Source: Anaeramoeba ignava BMAN (taxonomy: Eukaryota; Protista; Anaeramoebae). Taken from it: a stretch of 64,000 nucleotides of DNA. The stretch spans positions 186,001 through 250,000 of the forward strand of contig JAPDFW010000033.1 of NCBI GenBank assembly GCA_028826165.1. Direction: 5' to 3'. Positions 30,109 to 42,300 of this stretch are shown here, piece by piece. The position numbers were made by a program, and so were the translations under genes. The notes beneath the pieces were generated by a model that was not told the origin of the DNA, did no database searches, and saw only the letters and a list, made by a program, of their open reading frames with translations. The first letter of the stretch is position 1; every line of letters begins with the position of its first letter.

Positions 30109-33100
30109 TTAAATTTGTTTTAAAAAGAAATATTCCCAAAATTGCTCAAAAGAAATATGAAATGGAATATTTGATTGTTGTGGTTGAAGATGAACAATAA
30201 AAATAAAATAATAATCCAAATCATTTGATATTAAATCTTGAGAAAGTGAGTTATCAAGTAAACTATCAAGTGAATATTTAAATCTGTAAAAGATATCTTC
30301 AGGTAATTTTTCACTTACAGTGAAATTAAATATAAAAAATTTTCTGTTTTTGTTTTTGCTTTTGTTTTTGCTTTTGTTTTTGCTTTTGTTTTTGCTTTTG
30401 TTTTTGCTTTTGCTTTTGATAATTTTCGAATCAGGAATTTCAAGAGATTCCCTAATTTTCTTTTTAAAATCTGAGATATTCATTTCTCCAATATTTAATT
30501 GAAAAAATTCATATTGTTTATTAATTAAATTCACCATTTCTGAAAAAGTAAGAATTATTGATCTACGAATTTTTTGATCCATTAAAAATCGTAATAAATT
30601 TCCAATGTGTGAAAAGTTTGCCTCTTTATATTCTTTATAAAAATCTTTCAATTGTTCCTCTTCGCTTAATTCTTTCTCATCAATATTACAAATTCTCATC
30701 CATCTTTTTCTTCCATATTCCTTAATAAATTTCTCTTTTTTATCATCTTCATTATTATTATCATTATTACTATTATTATTAGTAAGATTTATAAATTCGT
30801 GTTGAAGTTTTAATGCAAGAGATGGCATCAAATCTTGATGGAAAGTTGGAAATAATTGACTTTCATCTATACTGAAAATCTTACAAAGTTCTTGAATCGT
30901 TGCTTCTTCTTCTGCTAAAAATTTTCTAATAAACTTTTTTTCGACAAATTCTTTTGGATTAAAATAATATTTCTCAAATCGACTCAAAATTGCAGGTGAT
31001 TCTCTTTCATAAGCTCTTTGCATTTCTGAAATCGCAATTATTCTAAATTTAGGATGAACAACCAAATCTGAAACAACATGCTCGAAAGAAATTTTAGCAT
31101 AAAGAACTTTGTTTTCCTCTTGATAATTTTGATTCAAAAGATCATATAAAGGTTCATAAAGGTTTTCACTTTTGCACAACATGATGATATTTCCTTTGGA
31201 AATCATTTCCTCAATTTTGTGTAATTTTTTGATAATTTTGTTTGGTGAATTATCCGATTCTAATGATGAACCAATAAACATTTTGAAATCTACTTGGTAC
31301 TTTTTCATTTTCTGAATTTCATCACTAAGACATCTCAAATTGCAAATTTTTGTTAAAATCATCATATGCCGAGAAAAATATGGAATATCATTCTCATCTG
31401 TAAATCCATGTCTTTTAAATAGAAATCCGTTAATATTTTGAGAAATGATTTTTTTTGTTTTGTATGTTTTGAATTCTATTATTTTCCGATCTATAGTTAG
31501 ATTTTGTAATAAAGCAGGTTTTGAATTAAAATTCCTTAAAAGTGAAATTGCTATTAAATCCAGGCTTTGTGTACTCACTCCATGATTTATGATACAATAT
31601 CCAATCATCTTGACGAAATAATAAAAATCTCTTAATCCAAAATAAGATCTTTTTTTTTGAGAATTGTTTTGTTGATTTTTTTGTTCTTTTTCTTGGTTAT
31701 CGATTATTGCTTTATAAATTTTGGTCAATTTATTTCCAAAATTACTAGGAATTTCACTATTCAAAGTATATAAAATCGAAGTTGCAGTCATTTTTAGGTC
31801 TGTGATTAAATCTCTTCTAATCAAAATGCCTCTATTTGTATTACTTGGATCCAAAGTCCAATTTGAAATGGCAACAACTGAGGCTTCTTTCAATTCTTTA
31901 AGTTTTTCTTGAATCTCTCCTTTTTTTTCAATAATATTTGATAATTGCTTTTCTAAATGCTCTAATTTTGAATGAAGAACTTTTAAAGGTAAATCAGGAC
32001 TCAATTCTGCAAGTGCAACTTCATCAAGAATAACAACCCCTAAATCTTCATTATTTGTTTTACTTTTTGCAATTTCAAAAACTTCTTCAATTCCTCTTGT
32101 TGATGTTATTGCTGAGCATTGAAGAAAAGAAGGTCTAATTGTTTGAAGATGAAGATCCATTGCCAATTTGTTTTTGTTTAATGGAGGTTTGAAAGCATCA
32201 AAGATTAATTCAACAGAAAGTGATTTTGATGTTCCTTTTTATTTTTATTTTTATTATTATTATTATTATTTTTATTATTATTATTATTTTTATTATTTTT
32301 TTTGTATTTACCTGGTTTTCCAATTATAAAAAGTGGAATTTGTGCGAAAATACAAACAAAAAGTAGTAAACAATTTTCTTTTAATGGAGTATTAATTGCA
32401 ATCATCCTCTTTTTGAATTGTGTTTTGTTTTCCAAAATATCAATAAAATGATCTTCCACTTTTTCAATTATCTCTTTACTGGCTTTTATTTTTTCATTAT
32501 CAAAAATTGAAGTGTAATATTTTTTTCTGGTTAAATTAGTTTGATGTTTTGTTTGATGTTTTGTTTGAGTAAGTCTACTTGCATAACAAATAAAAAGTGA
32601 TAAATGCAATGCTCTTTCCATGAATATTTCTCTTATTAATTCTTGGCCTTGGTATTTCAATAGAAATTGTCCTGCTTCTGATTCAGAAAGCCATCTAAAT
32701 ACTCGAAGAGTTCTTGAAACATCTCGAAGTGAAACTGAAGAAGCTAAATTTTTATTTTCATTTTTCCTCATAAAATTCTGGGATTTGGAAATATATTCTT
32801 CAAGTTGTTCGCGCTTGTTTTTAAAATGTGTGAGTTTATTTTCATCATTGTTAAATATTGCTGCAAATGTATTCTCAACCATTTTGTTAATATATTTTCT
32901 TTCTTCATTTTCGTTAAGTGATCCAAACTCAATACTAATCTGTTTCAATGAATTGGGGATTTCATGAACCCGATAAACAGCGTTTCGGATTTCTTCATAT
33001 TCTTTTCTTTTTTCTTGAAAATCATCAATCAAATCAAAATCATCCATATTTGAAATTTCTGAATCGGTTTCTCTTCGTTTTCGATATGGATTAATTGAAC

Positions 33101-36100
33101 CAATTAATTGGATATTTGCAGGAATTATTTTGTTATCGAATGTTCTATCTTTGAACATATATTTGAATAACTGGATATATGCTTTAGAAGCTGTGTTTAA
33201 TTCATCAAAAAAAAGAATAAATTTGTTATTGATGTCTGCTTTTGCTTTTTGAATTAATTCCTCTATTTCCTTAATTTTTATTCCTCCATGAATAGTTATC
33301 ATTTCAAATTTGTGATTTAAGATGTCCTCAAATAAATATTTGACTAACGCTGTTTTTCCACATCCAGTCTCTCCAACCAAAATCAAAGGAAGTCCAACAA
33401 ACATTCTAAATTGGATAAAAAGCATTTTGGAAATGTTATCAAGAGTTAAAACATATTTGGTTTTTTTTGCATTATGATTTCCAATTAACTCTTGCGGAAT
33501 TTGTTTTGGATTTAGAAATGAAAATAACCTGAAAATGTCATCAAATTGATGAATTTCAGTAAAGTTTTTGGATAAATTCCCATATACTTTTTTTGCAGAG
33601 TCAATAGAATCACTACTAACCCTTTTGGGCATATTTTCTTTAAATTTAATATTTAAAGAACATTGTTCAAATTTATCAAAAATTGGGTAATTTTTAGATA
33701 TAAAGGGCATCATTGTATATTTTGCAACTGAAATAACCCAAGAATTTAGAAATTTTTCACACTTTTGATAAGTTTTCTTTTTGTCATGGTGATATTTATC
33801 AGCGAAAATATCCCAATTAATAATCGGATTAATAAATGCTTTTAAAGATTTCCAAAAATGAGAAAATAATTCAAAGGTGAATGGAATTTGGGAGTTGTTA
33901 TCACTATCTAATTCCTTTAGAATTTTTTTAAATATTGTTTTTGAAATTTGGACAAATTCTTTAATTGGTGGATCTGGTCTAATTTGATTTAATTTTTGAT
34001 TTAATTTTTTGGAATCTTTTAGATTTTTAAGCAATGATCTTTTGTCAAGCTCTATCAAAAAATTAGCAACTTTTTTCAGATCATTATCTGATTTTTTATA
34101 AATTTGATGTAAGTCTTCAGAAATTTTATAATAATGAAAAGAAAAGTCGTTTTTTGAAGAAGAACATTCATAAAGATTAAATACTTTTAATGGATAAAAA
34201 AACTCCCATAAGTTTTCTCTGTTTGGAATTTCAAATAAAAGTTTTGTATTCTTAGGCAAATTCCAACAAAAATGATTCCATCTTTCAAATTTTCTATTTT
34301 CAATAGATCCCCACATGGCAAGTTGCCAAAGAGCATAAGTAATTTCAATGGAGCATTCATTTGGAAATTCGATATGAATAAATCTTTCAGTTTTATCATT
34401 TGTAGATTTGGCATCAATATTGTTTAATTCTGAGACTAATTCTGGAGCATCTCCTATTTTAAGCTGAATGAGATGGTATTTTTTTGATTCTTCCTTTTTT
34501 CCATGACAAAATTTTCTGATCTGATAGGTTTTTCCGTCTCCTGGATATAAAGAATAAAAAGCATGAATTTGTTTATAAAAAGGTGATTTTTTCATGATGG
34601 CGCTTATATCTTTTTCATATTGTTGGAAATTGAGCTTTATAATTTTGTCGTTGAAATGAGTATCTAAAAACTGGACTTCTGATTTTTCTGGAACAAAATT
34701 AATTATTGGAACTTTATACTCATTTTCTTGAGTTAATTTTTTAATGTAAATTAGTTCTTGGCATTCTCGTGATAAAAGATTTGGGTTGATAATTGCAAAA
34801 AATGATTTGGTTTGATTCTTTGCCTTTATTCCAAGATATTCAAGATTGTAATGATAATGAACGAAAAAGAAAGCTTCAATATCTTTCTTTGTTGTGTTTG
34901 GGGTGCAAAATAGAATTTGTTCTCTCAAAGGAAAAGAACCCGAAAATAAATAAAAGGCTAATGCAGTATATGAAAGAACAAGAGATTCATTTGGAACTCT
35001 AACCATATATATTTTTTTGCCTGTTTGTTTTAAATCTTTTATGAATTCTGTTCGGAGATTAAATTCTCCACTTAATAAATTTCTTTCAATTTTGATAAAA
35101 GCTTTTTGTATGGATTCCCAATTAAAACTTGGTTTTATTTCCTTAAAGACAGCTTCCGAAGTAGGAATCCATTCAGATAAACTTTTTTCAGATAAAGTCT
35201 TTGATAATTTTTTTACTTGATCACTTCTCTTATATCCAAAAATCAATCTTAAAGCTAATTCAGTGTGCCTTCTTTTATCTTCATCTTTTTGTTTATGATC
35301 GTTTATTAGAGAGCCGAAAAAGAAAAGATATTGAGTTTCAGAGAAAAGACCTGATAGTAATTGTTTTGAAATTTCTTGAGAATTTTTTATCCAATCATCC
35401 AGTATTTGAAACAACTCCTTTTCAAATTGTGCTAATTCAGCTTGATAATCAATAGTATCCGGTTTAATTTCAATGGGTTTTCCAATTTGTTTAATAAATT
35501 TAAAATATCTTATAGGAATAAATTTAATGATTTTTTGATAAATTGAATCAATTAAAATATAAAGGTGTTTAAACTCCTCAAAACGTGCTTGAAATAAGAT
35601 ATTTGAGTTTTCGTTAATTTGTGTTAATAATTGGTTTGCGTTCTCGTTTTTTGGGTTTTGGTTATTTTGATCTAGTGAAACTTTCCACATATTCCTGAAA
35701 TCATAATATTTTTTAATTTCCTGAGTATCATTTATTTCACATTTAAAAATCGGTTCTTTTAAATCAAAAGTCAATTTGCATCCTTTTTCAAAAATTTTCT
35801 TGATCACAAAAATAAGATATTGTGAAACATTTTGGTTAAGTATTTCCTTAATTCCAGGTAATTTTTCATGAAGATATTTGAAATCAATTCCTTGAGGAAG
35901 TTTGGTTTTTTGGAGTTTTGATTTAATATCCTGGATAGTTTCTAATTTATTATTTGGATCATTTATATTTTTTATAAAATCGAATAAATCGTTTAAATGT
36001 TTAATTATTTTTTTTTCTTCGAAGTGATTTCGCAATATGATAAGTTCTTCTTCAAAATTCCGTTTTGCCTTTTCAATAATCCATGATAATAATGAATTTT

Positions 36101-38435
36101 CATGATCTGTTGGTATTAATTCATTAATAAAATTAAGAACTTCTTCTTTTAAACCAGTTTGTTTTGAAATGGTTTCAAAATTGTCACTAATTTTGTGCAT
36201 TCTTTTATTTTTTAATTTTTCAGTCTCTTTTTTCATTTTTTCGAATTCTTCAGCTTCTTTTTTTTGTTGGTCTTCTGTAAGAAGAAATTCGCAAAATAAT
36301 AAAAAGGAATTATTAATGATGATTTGTTTTCTAAACTTGAAAAATTCCTTAATCTGCTTCATAGACTTTTCGCTAATGTTATCAAAATTTTTAAGGTTAT
36401 CAATGAATTCTTTTTCATGTTGCAATGGAATTTCTTGATCAATTTTATTAATTCTAATTGCATCACTTGAAATGCTTTCTTGCCATTTAAGCCAGTTTTC
36501 TTTTATTTGTTTGCAAATATATTCAAATTTTATTTGGGTATTATTTTTATCACTGATTGTGTTTTGGAGTATTTCTTTGTAAAAATGATTATCATATTTT
36601 TGAATGTGATATGGGATCTCATTATTTTTAATCTCTTTAATAAATTGTTCAAATTCCTCGATTTTTATCGTTTTTTGATTAAATTTATGGAGATTTGTGA
36701 AATTTTGGGTTTGACCATATTTAAATTCATAAAAAAAATTTTGGGAATTAGCAGGAAGTTGTTTTCTGAAATCTCCGAAAATTTTGCTAAATTGGGCAAT
36801 TTTTGTATTGTTAGATAATAAAGAAATGAACTTAGACAAACTATCTTTGTTGTGTAAATAAAATTCAACTTCTTTTAGGGTAACGTTTTCTTTTGATTGA
36901 ATTATAAAATAAAATTGGTTTATTCCTTGATAATATTCATTTAATTTTTGGATAAATTCTTTTTCAAATTTCGATAATTGTCCTTGAGAATTTGTTTCAT
37001 TTGGATATTTTTTTTTAAATTTAATAAACAAAAGTAATGATTTATACCATTTTTCATGTCCAGGAATAATATCCTTTTGCGTAATAATATATTCCCATTG
37101 TTTAGGTTTAACAAGTTCATTTTTTAGATTTGTATTGTATTTTGTCAAAAAGGAAATTTGAATTTTGGAAGCTAAATTTAAATTTCCTGATTCTAGAAAT
37201 TGATCGAAAAAGTTTTGTGTTTTGAGCATTTTTTGATATAATATTCCTGTTTGTTCTTGTGAATAATTTATAAATTCAAGAGTTTGATTTTGCCTTTCAT
37301 ACTCTTTATAAGCTTTAGAATTAAAAATTTGAAGTAAGTTATCCAATTTTTTTTTATTATTTTTTTCAGTAAAAGAGGGTTGATATTGAAGATTTTGAAT
37401 AGCTAATTGAGAAATTTTATTTTGATTTTGATTTTGATTATTTCGATTTTTGAAACAAGGAAATCCAATCCAAAATTCAAACCAATTTTCTAATGTTGGA
37501 AAAGTAATTTTTTTCAATAATTCTTGGAAGCCTTTCATTTGGAAAAGTTGAGATTCTGAATTCTCGAAAAAAGAATGGATAAAATTCCAATTTGCTTTTT
37601 TTGAATTCATTTTGAGCTTGAAAAGAAAATTAGCAATTGTTTGAGGAATATCTTTTCTTGTTTCTAAAAATGAAACGATACAAATCTTTAAATCATCTTG
37701 ATTAATTTCTTTTGGACGCTTGAAATAATAGACAGATTTATTGTTTGTGAAATCAAGAGAAAAAGTATCAAAAAGAGGAAGAAATCGAATTTTGATTTGA
37801 CTATTTGTTTGTGAAATTTTTTGAAGTAAAGGATAAATTTTTTTATAAGGATTCTTATTATTGGAACGTTTATGAGCAAAATGTATTATTTTATTGATTT
37901 CAATGAAGGTTTCTTTTGTGCATTGAGATAATAATTGTGTAAAAATGTTTTCATGAAAAGGGGAACTTAAAAGAAAAAGAAATCGGGAAATAATTTGAGG
38001 ATCTAAAGTTTGGAATTGATAATTTTGATTTTGATTTTGATCTTGATCGTTTTCTAAATGAATTTTTTGTATTGCTTCATCTAAAAATGCAGAAAAGATT
38101 TGTAAAAATGTATCAAAATCTTTTTTATTTGTTTCCTTCTTGTATTTTTCTTGATTGGATTTAGAAATATAATTATTTATTGCATTGAACATTAAATAAG
38201 TATTTAAGTTTTCACAATCAAAATGGAATAAAATCTGTTTTTTAGTCATTTCAACTTTTATATTTTGAGAATTATTTATTGAATAAGAAAAGGAATTTTC
38301 AGATTGAAAATAGAAAAAATGAATTCCATGTAAAGGAAACTTTGAATGATAAGATTTGTTGTCAATTTTAAGAATAGGATCAATAGAAGAAAGATCTTTT
38401 GAGATATAAATTAAAATAAAATCTTTTATTTCCAT
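30109..38435 (-). CDS. RNF213: RNF213/mysterin-like multi-AAA+ ATPase, ~2749 aa, exons 38435-32312 and 32234-30109; no C-terminal E3 module
   Basis: YPGDGKT; LILVGETGCGKT…IHGG…LFFDELNT…INPYR…VYRVHEIP…FGSL…SVSLRDV; LKEN…IPLFIIGKPG|TSKSLS…QCS…VVILDEVALAELSPDLPLKVLH…ISNWTLDPSNTNR…FGLRDFYYFVK…LRNF…LYDLLNQ…PAILSRFEK. The 77-nt GT-AG intron 32235-32311 restores the Walker A motif. Confidence 0.88.
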
Positions 38436-38603
38436 TTTTTAAAAAAAGAAAAAAAATGAAAATTTAAAGATCCACTTTTTTATTTAAATTTTTTTTTTAA
38501 AATGAAAAGGGGAAAAAAAATAAAAAAATAAAAGAAGAAAAAATAAAAAAAGATAAAAAAAAAGATTAGTTTTTCTTAAAGAATGTTTCTTAAAGAATGT
38601 TTC

Positions 38604-38939
38604 TTAAAGAATGTTGCATGCTTTCTTTTGTGAAGGTTGAGAAACAACTTGATAATTTTGGTTAAATGAATTTTTTGTTGGAATTGCATCAGGTTCATTT
38701 GGATTAGCGTTATCTCCCCCTCTTGTAAGAACCAAATGAATTGTTGTTTTTTCTTGAATGCGATAATCTTGAAAAGTTTGATCATCTTGTAATGTGTTTC
38801 CTGCTAAAATGAATTTTTGTTGTGAAAATGGTATTCCTTGTGATTGTTCAAGTTCTTTTTTTAAATTTAAGATTGTATCTTGTGGTGAAACATCAAATGC
38901 AAATTGTTTTCCTGTTAATGTTTTAACAAAAATTTTCAT
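38604..38939 (-). CDS. Ubiquitin-like protein (75-aa Ub fold ending TRGG) with a 36-aa extension ending in CaaX (KKACNIL)
   Basis: MKIFVKTLTGK…GIP..QQ..I.AG..L.D…DY.IQ…HLVLTRGG aligns to ubiquitin with one gap near the C-terminus; intronless. Confidence 0.92.
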   Translation of the reverse strand: MKIFVKTLTGKQFAFDVSPQDTILNLKKELEQSQGIPFSQQKFILAGNTLQDDQTFQDYRIQEKTTIHLVLTRGGDNANPNEPDAIPTKNSFNQNYQVVSQPSQKKACNIL

Positions 38940-39374
38940 ATTTTAATAAAATAAAAAAATGAAAACAACAAAAATGAAAAAAAAATTTAATTTTTGTTCC
39001 CTTTTTTTGATTAGATTTTTAATTTTAAATTTAATTTAATTTTAAATTTAATTTTTGATTTAATTTTTGATTAAAATAATTTAATTTAAATAATTTAATT
39101 TAAATAATTTAATTTAAATATTTTGATTTAAATAATTTGATTTAAATAATTTAATTTAAATAATTTAATTTAAATATTTTGATTTAAATATTTTAATTTA
39201 AATATTTTGATTTAAATAATTTTAATTTAAATAATTTGATTTAAATATTTTGATTTAAATTTTTTGATTAAAATGTGGAAAATGAACGAAAAATTTTTTA
39301 AAATTTTTTCATTTTTTTTTTCGATTTTTTTTATTTATACCTTTTTCAGAAAATAAATTACAAAAACAATTAAA

Positions 39375-42300
39375 ATGAGCAAAAAAAACACACAAGAACT
39401 TTTCAACATTCTTTCACAATTTATCTCTACAACAAATCCAAATACTCAAGTAGTAAATGCAACAGGAACATCTAATTCAAATGAAGAAAGTAAAAGAAAA
39501 TTTTTCTTTCTCTATTAATTCTATTTACAAAAATAAATATAACTCCGTTTTCTTTTGTTATTTTTTTTAGATACATTTCAACTTGAAAATTTAACACAAA
39601 ATTTAACTTCATCTTTACAAAAAAAGTCTAATCAAAATCAAGAAACAAGTATAATAAATTAAAATCAAAATCAAAATCAAAATCAAATATTAAAATTAAA
39701 ATCAAAATCTAAATCAAAATCAAATATTAAAATTAAAATTAAAATTAAAATTAAAATTAAAATCAAAATTAAAATCAAAATCAAAAAATTAAAATCAAAA
39801 TCAAAATCAAAATCAAAATTAAAATCAAATCCAAAATCAAAATCAAAAATCAAAATTAAAATTAAAATTAAAATCAAAATCAAATATTAAAATCAAAATC
39901 AAAATCAAAATCAAAATCAAAATCAAAATTAAAATTAAAATTAAAATTAAATATTAAAATCAAAATTAAAATCAAAATTAAAATCAAAATTAAAATTAAA
40001 ATTAAATATTAAAATCAAAATCAAAATCAAAATTAAAATTAAAATCAAAATCAAAATCAAAATCAAAATTAAAATCAAAATTAAAATTAAAATTAAATAT
40101 TAAAATCAAAATCAAAATCAAATATTAAAATCAAAATCAAAATCAAAATCAAAATCAAAATCAAAATTAAAATTAAAATTAAAATCAAAATCAAAATCAA
40201 AATCAAAATAAATCAAAATCAAAATAAATCAAAATCAAAATTAAAATCAAAATCAAGAAACAAGTATAATAAATTAAAATAAAAATCAAAATTAAAATAA
40301 AAATCAAAATTAAAATTAAAATTAAAATCAAAATTAAAATTAAAATCAAAATCAAAATCAAAATCAAAATTAAAATCAAAATTAAAATTAAAATTATAAT
40401 TAAAATTAAAATTAAAATCAAAATCAAAATTAAAATTAAAATCAAAATTAAAATCAAAATCAAAATCAAAATTAAAATTAAAATTAAAATCAAAATCAAA
40501 ATCAAAATTTAGAAAAAGATACATGTCAAACACTTATCCAAAAATTAAATCATTTTTCACAAGATTCTAATTACTACAATAAAATTTTTAAAGATTTAAT
40601 AAATTTAAACTTAAAGAATGAATGTAAATTATATACAAAAAAAAAAGAAGGATAAAATCAAAATTCATTTTATTTATTTATTCAAAATTAAAATTTAAAA
40701 AACAAAGCAAACCAAAAAGAAATAAAAAAAATAAATGGTACTCAAATGATTATATCTAAAATGAATCAATTCATAAATGATAAAACTCTTCAAAATTCAG
40801 GAATTGAAATTTTGGAAAATCTTTCATTTGATAATCCAGGTAAAAAAAAAAGAATTTTTACTTCAGAAAATCAAAACAAATTGATTTAATTTCCTTTCTT
40901 TAAATAAATTTGAAAGAGAATCAACTTGAAATTGCAGAAGCTCAAGGAATTCAAACAATCAGTGAATCAATGAAAACATTCTTATTTGATATGAATATTC
41001 AATATTTGGGATGTCGAGCTTTAGAAAATATTTCTTCAAATCAAAGTAAATTTGCAACAATATAATATAAAAATAATTCCTTTTTTTTGTAATTCATTTA
41101 TAAATAATTAAGATAACTGTATTCAAATGAGAAAACAAAATGGAATTGATCGGATTCTTCAAACAATGAGAAATTTTTACAGTTCTCAAGATATTCAAGA
41201 AATTTCTTGTAGAATTTTAGGAAATGTTTGTTTTGATGAAAGTAAATATTTAAAATTCAAAAAATACTTAAAAAAGAGAAGTATAAAAAAAAAATCTTTT
41301 TAGATAATAAAATCGAAGTTAATAAACAAGAAGGAATCCAAAAAATTATCCAAGCAATGATTAATTATGAATATAATGAGAATATCCAAGAAAACTCATG
41401 TAGAGCTTTAAGAATTTTAGCTTATCATAATCCTTGTAGATAAATTCAATTATTATTTTTTCAATTCCTTTTATTGATTTTTCTTTTTCTTTTTTCAAAT
41501 CAAAAAGCAAACCAAGAAACCATCCGTTCAATAAAAGGGATTCAATTAATTATCAAAGCTATGAAACATTTTACAGGAAATGCGCACCTTCAATATTTTG
41601 GATGTGGAGCTTTGGGAAATATTGCAGAAGATGATTGTATTTTATATTAAAACAAATAATTCAAAAAAATAATATTATTAATTATCATAATAGCAAATCA
41701 ATTTACACATTTAGAGGAAATTGAAACAATTATTCACTTGTTAAAAAGATTACCAGATCATCAAGAAATTCTATTTCAAGGAATTGGAGCTATAGGAATT
41801 ATGGCTTCTAAAAGCTCAAGTAAATTAAAATCAAAATCAAAATCAAAATCAAAATAAAAATAAAATTAAAATCAAAATCAAAATCAAAATCAAAATCAAA
41901 ATCAAAATTTAAATCAAAATCTAAATCAAAATCAAAATTTAAAATTTAAATTAAAATCAAAATCAAAATCAAAATAAAAATCAAAATCAAAATCAAAATC
42001 AAAATCAAAATCAAAATCAAAATAAAAATCAAAATAAAAATCAAAATTAAAATTAAAATTAAAATCAAAATTTAAAATCAAAATTAAAATCAAAATCAAA
42101 ATTAAAATCAAAATCAAAATCAAAATTAAAATCAAAATTAAAATTAAAATTTAAATTTAAAAAAATCAAAATCAAAATCTAAAAAAATCAAAATCAAAAT
42201 CAAAATAAAAATCAAAATCAAAATCAAAATCAAAATCAAAATCAAAATCAATTTAAAAATCAAAATTAAAATCAAAATCAAAATTAAAATAAAAATCAAA

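What the first reader, a model, noticed from the sequence alone, without database searches (positions are those of the whole stretch)
38604..38939. Ubiquitin-like protein with both a di-glycine and a C-terminal CaaX box
Seen: the Ub fold keeps L8/I44/V70 and K6/K11/K27 but has K48N, K63E, K29E and K33S; the tail is LTRGG, one residue shorter than LRLRGG; a 36-aa linker then ends KKACNIL*. Established: CaaL directs geranylgeranylation, and known membrane-anchored ubiquitin-fold proteins (MUB/UBL3) have the CaaX in place of the di-glycine. Inference: a membrane-tethered pro-modifier released by a DUB-like protease, a K48/K63 chain terminator, or a membrane decoy that recruits Ub-binding proteins.
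Basis: partly seen in the sequence, partly recalled or inferred. Interest (0 to 1): 0.8.

Follow-up and report, generated by a model that had tools for sequence, protein, structure and literature searches.

The report
Lipid-anchored ubiquitin copy in an amoeba
The anaerobic amoeba Anaeramoeba ignava encodes a close copy of ubiquitin with a floppy tail ending in a lipid-attachment signal. It is one of at least six such genes in this genome and is probably a membrane-tethered ubiquitin look-alike that arose separately from the known MUB/UBL3 family.

Summary
Window 38604-38939 (-) is an intact 111-aa ORF in Anaeramoeba ignava and is in NCBI nr with exactly this length.

- **Domain:** residues 1-75 are a ubiquitin-family domain (Pfam PF00240, E 1e-24). 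They are about 50% identical to ubiquitin, and the model superposes on ubiquitin at 0.7-0.8 Å.
- **Residues:** L8, I44, H68, V70, K6, K11 and K27 are kept. K29E, K33S, K48N and K63E are confirmed. The tail reads LTRGG, with R72 replaced by T and L73 missing.
- **Tail:** a disordered 32-aa hydrophilic linker follows, then KKA-CNIL and the stop.

The genome holds five more ubiquitin-domain + linker + CaaX genes, two on contig C122 and three on C75. One C122-type gene appears as a complete transcript ORF. The cysteine is invariant in all six, but only the window gene has Gly-Gly and the I44 patch.

The conserved feature is therefore the lipid anchor, not a cleavage site. All CaaX-processing enzyme families are encoded.

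None of the six matches the MUB/UBL3 Pfam family, and the window gene has no room for the MUB lap-bar loop. They work like MUBs but are not members.

No relative was found outside A. ignava, although the searches were insensitive. Another first-reader note of this scan (s1-695256) had already flagged the C75 members on other DNA of this genome.

Prenylation, cleavage and expression of this gene remain untested.

The parts
38604..38939 (-). Complete single-exon CDS including the TAA stop, 111 aa: ubiquitin-like protein with a CaaX end
   Evidence: ORF list and sequence. The identical 111-aa protein is in NCBI nr and UniRef. There is no GTA donor inside the ORF.
38715..38939 (-). Ubiquitin-family domain, residues 1-75, ending T-R-G-G
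   Evidence: Pfam PF00240, E 1.1e-24. About 50% identical to ubiquitin. AlphaFold2 pLDDT is above 90 over residues 1-72. Superposes on ubiquitin with Z 16 and rmsd 0.7-0.8 Å over 73-74 residues.
38715..38720 (-). Gly74-Gly75, now internal (ubiquitin G75-G76 equivalent)
   Evidence: Alignment to ubiquitin. Absent from all five CaaX paralogues.
38619..38714 (-). Disordered hydrophilic linker, residues 76-107, ending in Lys-Lys-Ala
   Evidence: pLDDT below 50 for residues 75-105. Coding-like GC of 31.5% against 6-14% in the flanks. Paralogues have linkers of different sequence and length.
38607..38618 (-). CaaX box Cys108-Asn-Ile-Leu, predicted geranylgeranylation site
   Evidence: Read from the sequence. 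Cys is invariant and Ile110 conserved in six paralogues. The GGT1 preference for Leu at +3 and for lysines at -1 to -7 is from PMC1175975.
38572..38615 (.). Perfect 14-nt tandem repeat, 3.1 copies, overlapping the last codons, the stop and the start of the 3' UTR
   Evidence: Tandem Repeats Finder: period 14, 100% matches, score 88.

Best explanation
The gene encodes a permanently membrane-anchored ubiquitin look-alike.

**Proposed mechanism (inferred)**
1. GGTase-I geranylgeranylates Cys108.
2. An Rce1-type protease removes the last three residues, Asn-Ile-Leu.
3. ICMT methylates the new C-terminus.
4. The two lysines just upstream add electrostatic membrane affinity.
5. The 32-residue disordered linker then holds a near-native ubiquitin domain on the cytosolic face of a membrane.

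That domain keeps ubiquitin's L8/I44/H68/V70 recognition patch. It could therefore act as a fixed, non-removable 'ubiquitin' mark that recruits ubiquitin-binding proteins or E2 enzymes. This is the job that MUB/UBL3 proteins do in plants and animals.

It lacks K48, K63, K29 and K33, so the common chain types could not be built on it.

The gene is the least-diverged member of a small Anaeramoeba ignava family of at least six genes. The family arose from ubiquitin genes themselves, independently of MUB/UBL3. On this reading the internal Arg-Gly-Gly is a leftover of ubiquitin ancestry and not a processing site.

**Shown:** the ORF, the fold, the residues, the family, the invariant cysteine and the presence of the enzyme families.
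**Inferred:** lipidation, membrane location, binding partners and the absence of cleavage.
For: - The ORF and its residues are confirmed.
- It is a ubiquitin-family domain with a confident ubiquitin fold and a disordered tail.
- Five paralogues have the same ubiquitin domain + low-complexity linker + basic or Cys-rich stretch + C-x-I-[LF] architecture. Two are on C122 (45% identical, ending RKA-CNIL and KMK-CIIL). Three are on C75, among the polyubiquitin genes (ending CIIF, CRIF and CIIL).
- The Cys is an invariant alignment column, while Gly-Gly occurs only in the window gene.
- The two C122 copies are identical over all 225 nt of the ubiquitin domain but diverge over the last 45 nt or so. 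Both still end in basic residues followed by a CaaL box.
- The window gene and C122a share a 22-nt 3' end with one mismatch.
- A C122-type mRNA with a complete ORF ending in CIIL is in the EukProt A. ignava transcriptome.
- The tail DNA has coding-like GC.
- The background rate of CaaX-like ends is 6 of 993.
- The genome encodes the CaaX machinery: PPTA alpha repeats at 4 loci, prenyltransferase beta at 3 loci, Rce1-like at 5 and ICMT at 3.
- The sequence upstream of the Cys fits the GGT1 motif rules (PMC1175975).
Against: - There is no direct evidence of prenylation, membrane binding or even transcription of this particular gene.
- This member alone retains R-G-G and the intact I44 patch, so it may work differently from its paralogues, including by cleavage.
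- Asn at the a1 position is not the classical aliphatic residue.
- No orthologue was found in any other species, so conservation over time is untested.
- The domain tree does not resolve whether the six genes share one origin.
Confidence: 0.55

Rival explanations
1. It is a dual-fate pro-modifier. The protein is first geranylgeranylated and parked on a membrane. A deubiquitinase-like protease then cuts after Gly75 and releases a 75-aa ubiquitin-like modifier. An E1/E2 cascade conjugates it locally, and because K48 and K63 are missing it caps chains.
For: - R-G-G is present at the position equivalent to ubiquitin's C-terminus and is followed by Asp, not Pro.
- Ubiquitin is naturally made as C-terminally extended precursors, and this genome has the usual Ub-L40 and Ub-S27a fusions.
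- The genome has many other divergent ubiquitin-like ORFs that end in GG plus one to a few residues.
- The window gene is the only CaaX member with an intact ubiquitin-like surface.
Against: - Gly-Gly is not conserved in any of the five CaaX paralogues.
- R72 is Thr, L73 is missing, R42 is Lys and R54 is Gln. By established knowledge recalled from memory, R72 and L73 are key contacts for Uba1 and for USP/UCH deubiquitinases.
- No dedicated E1 or protease is linked to the gene.
Confidence: 0.15
2. It is a cytosolic ubiquitin-like protein whose C-terminal CNIL is not used, so the tail is just a disordered extension. Alternatively it is a young, drifting duplicate with little or no function.
For: - The genome carries at least 95 ubiquitin-like matches, including clusters with in-frame stops, so duplicates arise and decay often.
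- No orthologue was seen elsewhere.
- There is no transcript evidence for this copy.
- A perfect 14-nt triplication overlaps the stop codon, which shows recent slippage at the 3' end.
Against: - The ORF is intact.
- The tail keeps coding-like GC in a genome whose non-coding DNA is 6-14% GC.
- The Cys is invariant in six paralogues, against a background of 6 in 993.
- The C122 copies keep a CaaL box despite a diverged 3' end.
Confidence: 0.2
3. The gene model is wrong. The ubiquitin-like ORF would be a 5' exon of the AAA+ ATPase gene that starts 168 bp downstream on the same strand and in the same frame, and the CaaX tail would be intron or read-through sequence.
For: - The two ORFs are on the same strand, only 168 bp apart, and their start codons are 504 nt (a multiple of three) apart.
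- Other large proteins in this genome contain internal ubiquitin-like domains.
Against: - Three stop codons and AT-rich junk separate the two ORFs.
- The ORF contains no GTA-type donor like the intron visible at about 39492-39571.
- NCBI annotates exactly this 111-aa product.
- The paralogous C122 transcript ends at its CaaX box.
- The tail has coding-like composition.
Confidence: 0.05

Closest known systems
MUB / UBL3 (membrane-anchored ubiquitin-fold proteins; Pfam PF13881 Rad60-SLD_2)
   Same: - A small protein of about 110-130 aa.
- A beta-grasp ubiquitin fold, an unstructured C-terminal stretch and a CaaX box.
- X is Leu in human UBL3 (CVIL) and in one Arabidopsis MUB (CTIL), which are taken to be geranylgeranylated (PMC10511055; PMC4996978).
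- The likely role is the same: displaying a ubiquitin-like surface on membranes.
   Different: - There is no PF13881 match for the window protein or any of its five paralogues.
- It is about 50% identical to ubiquitin itself.
- There is no insertion where the MUB-specific lap-bar loop sits (gapless alignment to ubiquitin).
- It retains an internal Arg-Gly-Gly, whereas MUBs have no Gly-Gly.
- The window gene has no extra cysteine next to the CaaX. The C75 paralogues do have CC-x-CC.
- The only PF13881-like matches in the genome look like other UBL-domain proteins, not MUBs.
Ubiquitin precursors with C-terminal extensions (Ub-eL40, Ub-eS31, and the last repeat of polyubiquitin)
   Same: A ubiquitin domain followed directly after Gly-Gly by extra residues. 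The same genome has canonical examples.
   Different: - Here the extension is a disordered linker ending in a lipidation signal, not a ribosomal protein or a single capping residue.
- The tail before Gly-Gly is shortened and lacks R72 and L73.
- K48 and K63 are missing.
Polybasic CaaX membrane anchors of Ras/Rho GTPases (hypervariable regions)
   Same: - A flexible hydrophilic linker, lysines just upstream, and CaaL.
- Paralogues differ in their 'second signal'. The window, C122 and C75a genes use a polybasic stretch; C75b and C75c use Cys clusters that could be palmitoylated.
   Different: The cargo is a ubiquitin domain, not a GTPase.

Membership tests
MUB/UBL3 (PF13881) | Sequence match to the family profile PF13881 (Rad60-SLD_2) | tested here: not met
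   PF13881 is absent from the Pfam hits of the window protein at E up to 1 and from its five CaaX paralogues at E up to 0.1. PF00240 is the top hit for all six.
MUB/UBL3 (PF13881) | Beta-grasp ubiquitin fold | tested here: met
   AlphaFold2 pLDDT is above 90 for residues 1-72. Z 16 and rmsd 0.7-0.8 Å against ubiquitin.
MUB/UBL3 (PF13881) | C-terminal CaaX box | tested here: met
   Ends C-N-I-L then stop.
MUB/UBL3 (PF13881) | No Gly-Gly motif (PMC4996978) | tested here: not met
   R73-G74-G75 is present at the ubiquitin-equivalent position.
MUB/UBL3 (PF13881) | MUB-specific lap-bar loop (alpha2-beta5 insertion) used to block E1 access to the E2 | tested here: not met
   The alignment to ubiquitin is gapless over residues 1-72, so there is no insertion. 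The loop is described in PMC4996978.
MUB/UBL3 (PF13881) | Prenylation-dependent membrane localisation and binding of Ube2D-type E2s | not testable with these tools
   Needs cell biology and biochemistry.
Ubiquitin family, conjugatable type (PF00240 with a processed Gly-Gly end) | PF00240 domain | tested here: met
   E 1.1e-24, 86.4 bits against a cut-off of 25.4.
Ubiquitin family, conjugatable type (PF00240 with a processed Gly-Gly end) | Gly-Gly at the end of the fold, exposable by a protease | tested here: inconclusive
   Gly-Gly is present and followed by Asp. It is not conserved in the paralogues, and cleavage was not tested.
Ubiquitin family, conjugatable type (PF00240 with a processed Gly-Gly end) | Ubiquitin tail L71-R72-L73-R74 and R42 as read by Uba1 and deubiquitinases | tested here: not met
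   The tail is L-T-R-G-G, with R72T and L73 absent, and R42K. The functional role of these residues is from established knowledge and was not tested here.
GGTase-I CaaX substrates | Cys at -4, aliphatic a2, Leu at X | tested here: met
   C-N-I-L. The rule is from PMC1175975.
GGTase-I CaaX substrates | Flexible hydrophilic linker of about 11 residues upstream, often with lysines at -1 to -7 | tested here: met
   The upstream residues are Q-V-V-S-Q-P-S-Q-K-K-A. pLDDT is below 50 for residues 75-105. The rule is from PMC1175975.
GGTase-I CaaX substrates | The organism encodes the prenyltransferase, Rce1 and ICMT | tested here: met
   PPTA at 4 loci, Prenyltrans beta at 3 loci, Rce1-like at 5 and ICMT at 3. 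I did not determine which beta subunit is the GGTase-I one.
GGTase-I CaaX substrates | Actual lipid attachment | not testable with these tools
   Needs metabolic labelling or mass spectrometry.

The most novel reading that the evidence does not exclude
This would be a lipid-anchored, near-native ubiquitin that also remains cleavable after Gly-Gly. It would act as a switchable membrane 'ubiquitin coat': ubiquitin receptors read it while it is tethered, and it can be released or conjugated on demand. It might work together with the adjacent RNF213-like AAA+ ATPase in surveillance of phagosome or symbiosome membranes in this symbiont-bearing amoeba. No prenylated ubiquitin precursor of this kind turned up in the papers I searched.
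Probability: 0.1. Interest if true: 0.8.

Novelty: new variant of a known kind. Interest (0 to 1): 0.5.

Why it matters
MUB/UBL3 were the only ubiquitin-fold proteins with a prenyl anchor in the papers I could search.

Here a deep-branching metamonad appears to have re-invented the same solution from ubiquitin itself, at least six times over within one family. The members carry Ras-like alternative membrane signals. One member, the window gene, still looks like ubiquitin on its binding surface and at its Gly-Gly.

This offers a natural experiment on three points:
- what a fixed, non-removable ubiquitin on a membrane does;
- how ubiquitin-like modifiers lose conjugation and gain anchoring;
- why A. 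ignava attaches CaaX signals to so many ubiquitin-system proteins. Other notes of this scan list BTB, Rab-BTB and C2/PPxY families with CaaX ends.

The whole case is still in silico.

Tried and rejected
1. **Big HMMER search.** The top 150 hits were all multi-domain polyubiquitins, whose summed scores outrank any single-domain orthologue. The search says nothing about orthologues.
2. **Word-based searches.** I queried with the window protein, an alignment of the six paralogues and the C122 ubiquitin domain. The only relatives with a CaaX end were from A. ignava itself. The window-protein search missed even the 45%-identical C122 paralogues, although those exact sequences are not in the collection, so the miss is not a clean measure of sensitivity. 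The blank is in any case weak evidence.
3. **Reads.** Six runs were found, including one marine oligo-dT RNA run holding 4% of the words.
4. **Exact-pattern scan of metagenome contigs.** I searched for the 22-nt 3' end shared by the window gene and C122a. The four hits come from unrelated contigs of about 32% GC with no ubiquitin domain, so they are chance matches.
5. **ESM Atlas.** It returned only generic ubiquitin clusters, all scoring below 0.9.
6. **Fusion with the downstream AAA+ gene.** Rejected: three stops lie between the ORFs and there is no donor site.
7. **Conserved linkage to an AAA+ gene.** The C122 paralogues sit next to an actin-like gene instead.
8. **Domain phylogeny.** With 76 columns it is unresolved. 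One origin of the CaaX tail is neither shown nor excluded.
9. **Bacterial promoter and terminator scan.** Irrelevant for a eukaryote and no better than the shuffles.
10. **CaaX-like ends among the polyubiquitin-like hits.** Three of these proteins end in CaaX-like tetrapeptides, one of them a lamprey isoform. I treated these as sporadic.
11. **A true MUB in this genome.** The PF13881 matches are marginal (about 24 bits). The best one looks like the first exon of another UBL-domain protein.

Full report
**What is there**

Window 38604-38939 on the minus strand is an uninterrupted ORF from ATG to TAA that encodes 111 residues. The window is contig C24:186001-250000 of a 42.8-Mb, 147-contig genome, and the window itself averages about 18% GC.

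A paralogue outside the window is NCBI KAJ5073463.1 of Anaeramoeba ignava. This identifies the organism as a free-living anaerobic metamonad with bacterial symbionts. The exact 111-aa product is itself in NCBI nr and UniRef, so an independent annotation called the same gene.

**The ubiquitin domain**

- Residues 3-72 match Pfam PF00240 at E 1.1e-24. PF13881, the MUB/UBL3 family, is not among the hits even at E up to 1.
- Against solved structures the best single-domain matches are ubiquitin itself, at about E 1e-20. The alignment has no gaps over residues 1-72 and one missing residue at ubiquitin L73.
K6, L8, K11, K27, I44, H68 and V70 are kept, and K29E, K33S, K48N and K63E are present.
- It adds R42K, R54Q and R72T.
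- An AlphaFold2 model has pLDDT above 90 for residues 1-72 and below 50 for residues 75-105.
- The folded part superposes on ubiquitin with Z 16 and rmsd 0.7-0.8 Å over 73-74 residues at about 50% identity.
- The genome has its own canonical ubiquitin, Ub-eL40, Ub-eS31 and a NEDD8-like gene. The window gene is none of these.

**The tail**

After T-R-G-G come 32 hydrophilic residues rich in N, P, Q, S and D. Then come K-K-A and C-N-I-L before the stop.

The tail is coding, not read-through junk:
- Its DNA has 31.5% GC against 28% for the ubiquitin domain. The 168 bp downstream has 13.7% and the 251 bp upstream has 6%.
- The other two frames are full of stops.

The CaaX box has Ile at a2 and Leu at X. 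The upstream stretch is flexible, hydrophilic and lysine-bearing. The PrePS study describes exactly this for GGTase-I substrates (PMC1175975).

**The decisive context: a family**

Searching the whole genome with the protein gave 95 ubiquitin-like matches. I fetched about 60 of the places and read each open frame to its stop. Five more genes have the same architecture:

| Gene | Location | Length | Junction after the fold | C-terminal end |
|---|---|---|---|---|
| C122a | L047:2444-2896:- | 151 aa | T-S-G-E | R-K-A-C-N-I-L |
| C122b | L047:1757-2209:- | 151 aa | T-S-G-E | K-M-K-C-I-I-L |
| C75a | L061:7609-8004:- | 132 aa | no glycines | polybasic, C-I-I-F |
| C75b | L061:5096-5491:- | 132 aa | no glycines | C-C-S-C-C-R-I-F |
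| C75c | L061:5730-6047:- | 106 aa as read from the open frame (no ATG at its start) | no glycines | C-C-G-C-C-I-I-L |

- The two C122 genes are adjacent and 45% identical to the window protein. Their linker is a T-Y-Q repeat.
- The three C75 genes sit between polyubiquitin arrays and are 18-24% identical to the window protein.
- All five hit PF00240 and none hits PF13881.
- In the six-way alignment the CaaX cysteine and the a2 isoleucine are invariant columns, although the linkers cannot be aligned.
- Among 993 other open frames of at least 45 aa in the same loci, only 6 end in a CaaX-like tetrapeptide.

A complete ORF of the C122b type, 128 aa and ending K-M-K-C-I-I-L, is in the EukProt A. 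ignava transcriptome. At least one family member is therefore transcribed with its CaaX end intact.

The two C122 genes are identical over all 225 nt of the ubiquitin domain but diverge sharply over the last 45 nt or so. Both still end in basic residues followed by a CaaL box. The window gene and C122a share a 22-nt 3' end with one mismatch.

**What is not conserved**

- Gly-Gly occurs only in the window gene.
- The I44 patch is also intact only there. The C122 pair has L8S, I44T and H68N (read).

The feature under common selection is therefore the lipid anchor. The window gene is the member closest to ubiquitin: its terminal branch is 0.21, against 0.92 for C122 and a stem of 1.38 for the C75 trio. 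The tree is otherwise unresolved, and a single origin of the CaaX tail is neither shown nor excluded.

**Machinery**

The genome encodes all the CaaX-processing enzyme families:
- prenyltransferase alpha repeats at four loci;
- beta subunits at three loci;
- Rce1-like proteases at five loci;
- ICMT at three loci.

I did not assign which beta subunit belongs to GGTase-I.

**Most likely mechanism (confidence about 0.55)**

1. Cys108 is geranylgeranylated.
2. The last three residues are removed and the new end is methylated.
3. The lysines add membrane affinity.
4. The long disordered linker displays a ubiquitin-like domain on the cytosolic face of a membrane.

With its ubiquitin recognition patch intact and K48 and K63 gone, the domain would be a fixed, non-extendable ubiquitin mark. 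It could recruit ubiquitin-binding proteins or E2s. This is analogous to how MUBs tether Ube2D-type E2s to the plasma membrane (PMC4996978) and how UBL3 acts from membranes (PMC10511055). All of these steps are inferred.

**Rival readings**

- A cleavable pro-modifier is not excluded (about 0.15). The non-conservation of Gly-Gly and the loss of R72 and L73 count against it. The role of those two residues is established knowledge recalled from memory.
- A non-functional or unused tail (about 0.2) is opposed by the composition and conservation arguments above.
- A fusion with the downstream AAA+ gene (about 0.05) is opposed by three intervening stops and the lack of a donor site.

**Comparison with known families**

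The protein works like a MUB/UBL3, but it fails that family's membership tests:
- it has no PF13881 match;
- it has no lap-bar loop insertion;
- it has a Gly-Gly.

By descent it is a ubiquitin-family (PF00240) protein. The papers I could search describe only MUB/UBL3 as CaaX-bearing ubiquitin-fold proteins. The A. ignava genome paper does not mention ubiquitin, CaaX or prenylation. I therefore rate it a new variant of a known kind, namely membrane-anchored ubiquitin-fold proteins.

**Relation to earlier notes of this scan**

- A first-reader note on other DNA of this genome (s1-695256) had already flagged the C75 CaaX ubiquitin-like genes. I found them independently before reading it (then).
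- Other notes list CaaX-ended BTB, Rab-BTB and C2/PPxY families in this genome. This suggests that lipid-anchoring of ubiquitin-system parts is a theme of the organism. I did not test those notes.
The neighbour shows only AAA-type Pfam hits, and the C122 paralogues lie beside an actin-like gene.

**Limits**

I sent nothing from those places to any search tool afterwards.
- The one large HMMER search was swamped by polyubiquitins.
- The word-based searches are insensitive below about 50-60% identity.
- As a result, the expression of this gene, the existence of orthologues in other Anaeramoeba species and the wider neighbourhoods of the paralogues all remain open.

Noticed in passing
window 38572-38615: A perfect 14-nt tandem repeat (3.1 copies, 100% matches) overlaps the last codons and the stop of the gene. 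The first two copies form the start of the 3' UTR. This is a recent slippage event at the CaaX-encoding end.
   Followed up: partly
window 38436-38603 and 32205-38435 (-): A 2076-aa ORF with only AAA-type Pfam hits (AAA_5, AAA, DUF815) starts 168 bp downstream of the ubiquitin-like gene. It is on the same strand and in the same frame, but three stops lie between the two ORFs.
   Followed up: partly
window about 39010-39270 (I did not search 39194-39229): A long AT-only satellite of short 'taatttaaat'-like units lies upstream of the gene. This stretch has about 6% GC.
   Followed up: no
L036, L038, L039, L040 (G000 C147:8-16 kb; C65:15-54 kb): There is a second, divergent kind of polyubiquitin array with 77-aa units. 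Each unit begins N-F-Q-I-F-V-K and ends R-L-R-G-G-N. It is distinct from the canonical polyubiquitin arrays on C75.
   Followed up: no
L002, L006, L031 (G000 C56:493-506 kb): A tandem cluster of genes joins a ubiquitin domain ending T-L-R-R-G-D, without Gly-Gly, to a Cys-rich region of about 150 aa that has no Pfam match beyond ubiquitin.
   Followed up: partly
L035, L041, L049, L058 (G000 C70:330 kb, C24:281 kb, C59:400 kb, C74:39 kb): Four ORFs of 1365-1480 aa each carry five or six ubiquitin-like domains followed by about 750 aa of other sequence. One lies about 30 kb beyond this window on the same contig.
   Followed up: no
L042 (G000 C84:300.5-307.5 kb): A cluster of about 73-76-aa ubiquitin-like ORFs ends in L-V-L-A-L or L-F-L-R without Gly-Gly. 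Several neighbouring matches are interrupted by stops, so this looks like a decaying array.
   Followed up: no
L047:1757-2896 (G000 C122:165.7-166.9 kb): The two C122 CaaX ubiquitin-like genes are identical over the whole ubiquitin domain at the DNA level. They differ in T-Y-Q repeat number and in the last 45 nt or so, giving two different CaaX ends (CNIL and CIIL). Their exact protein sequences are not in the public protein collection, and the transcriptome form has fewer repeats (128 aa).
   Followed up: partly
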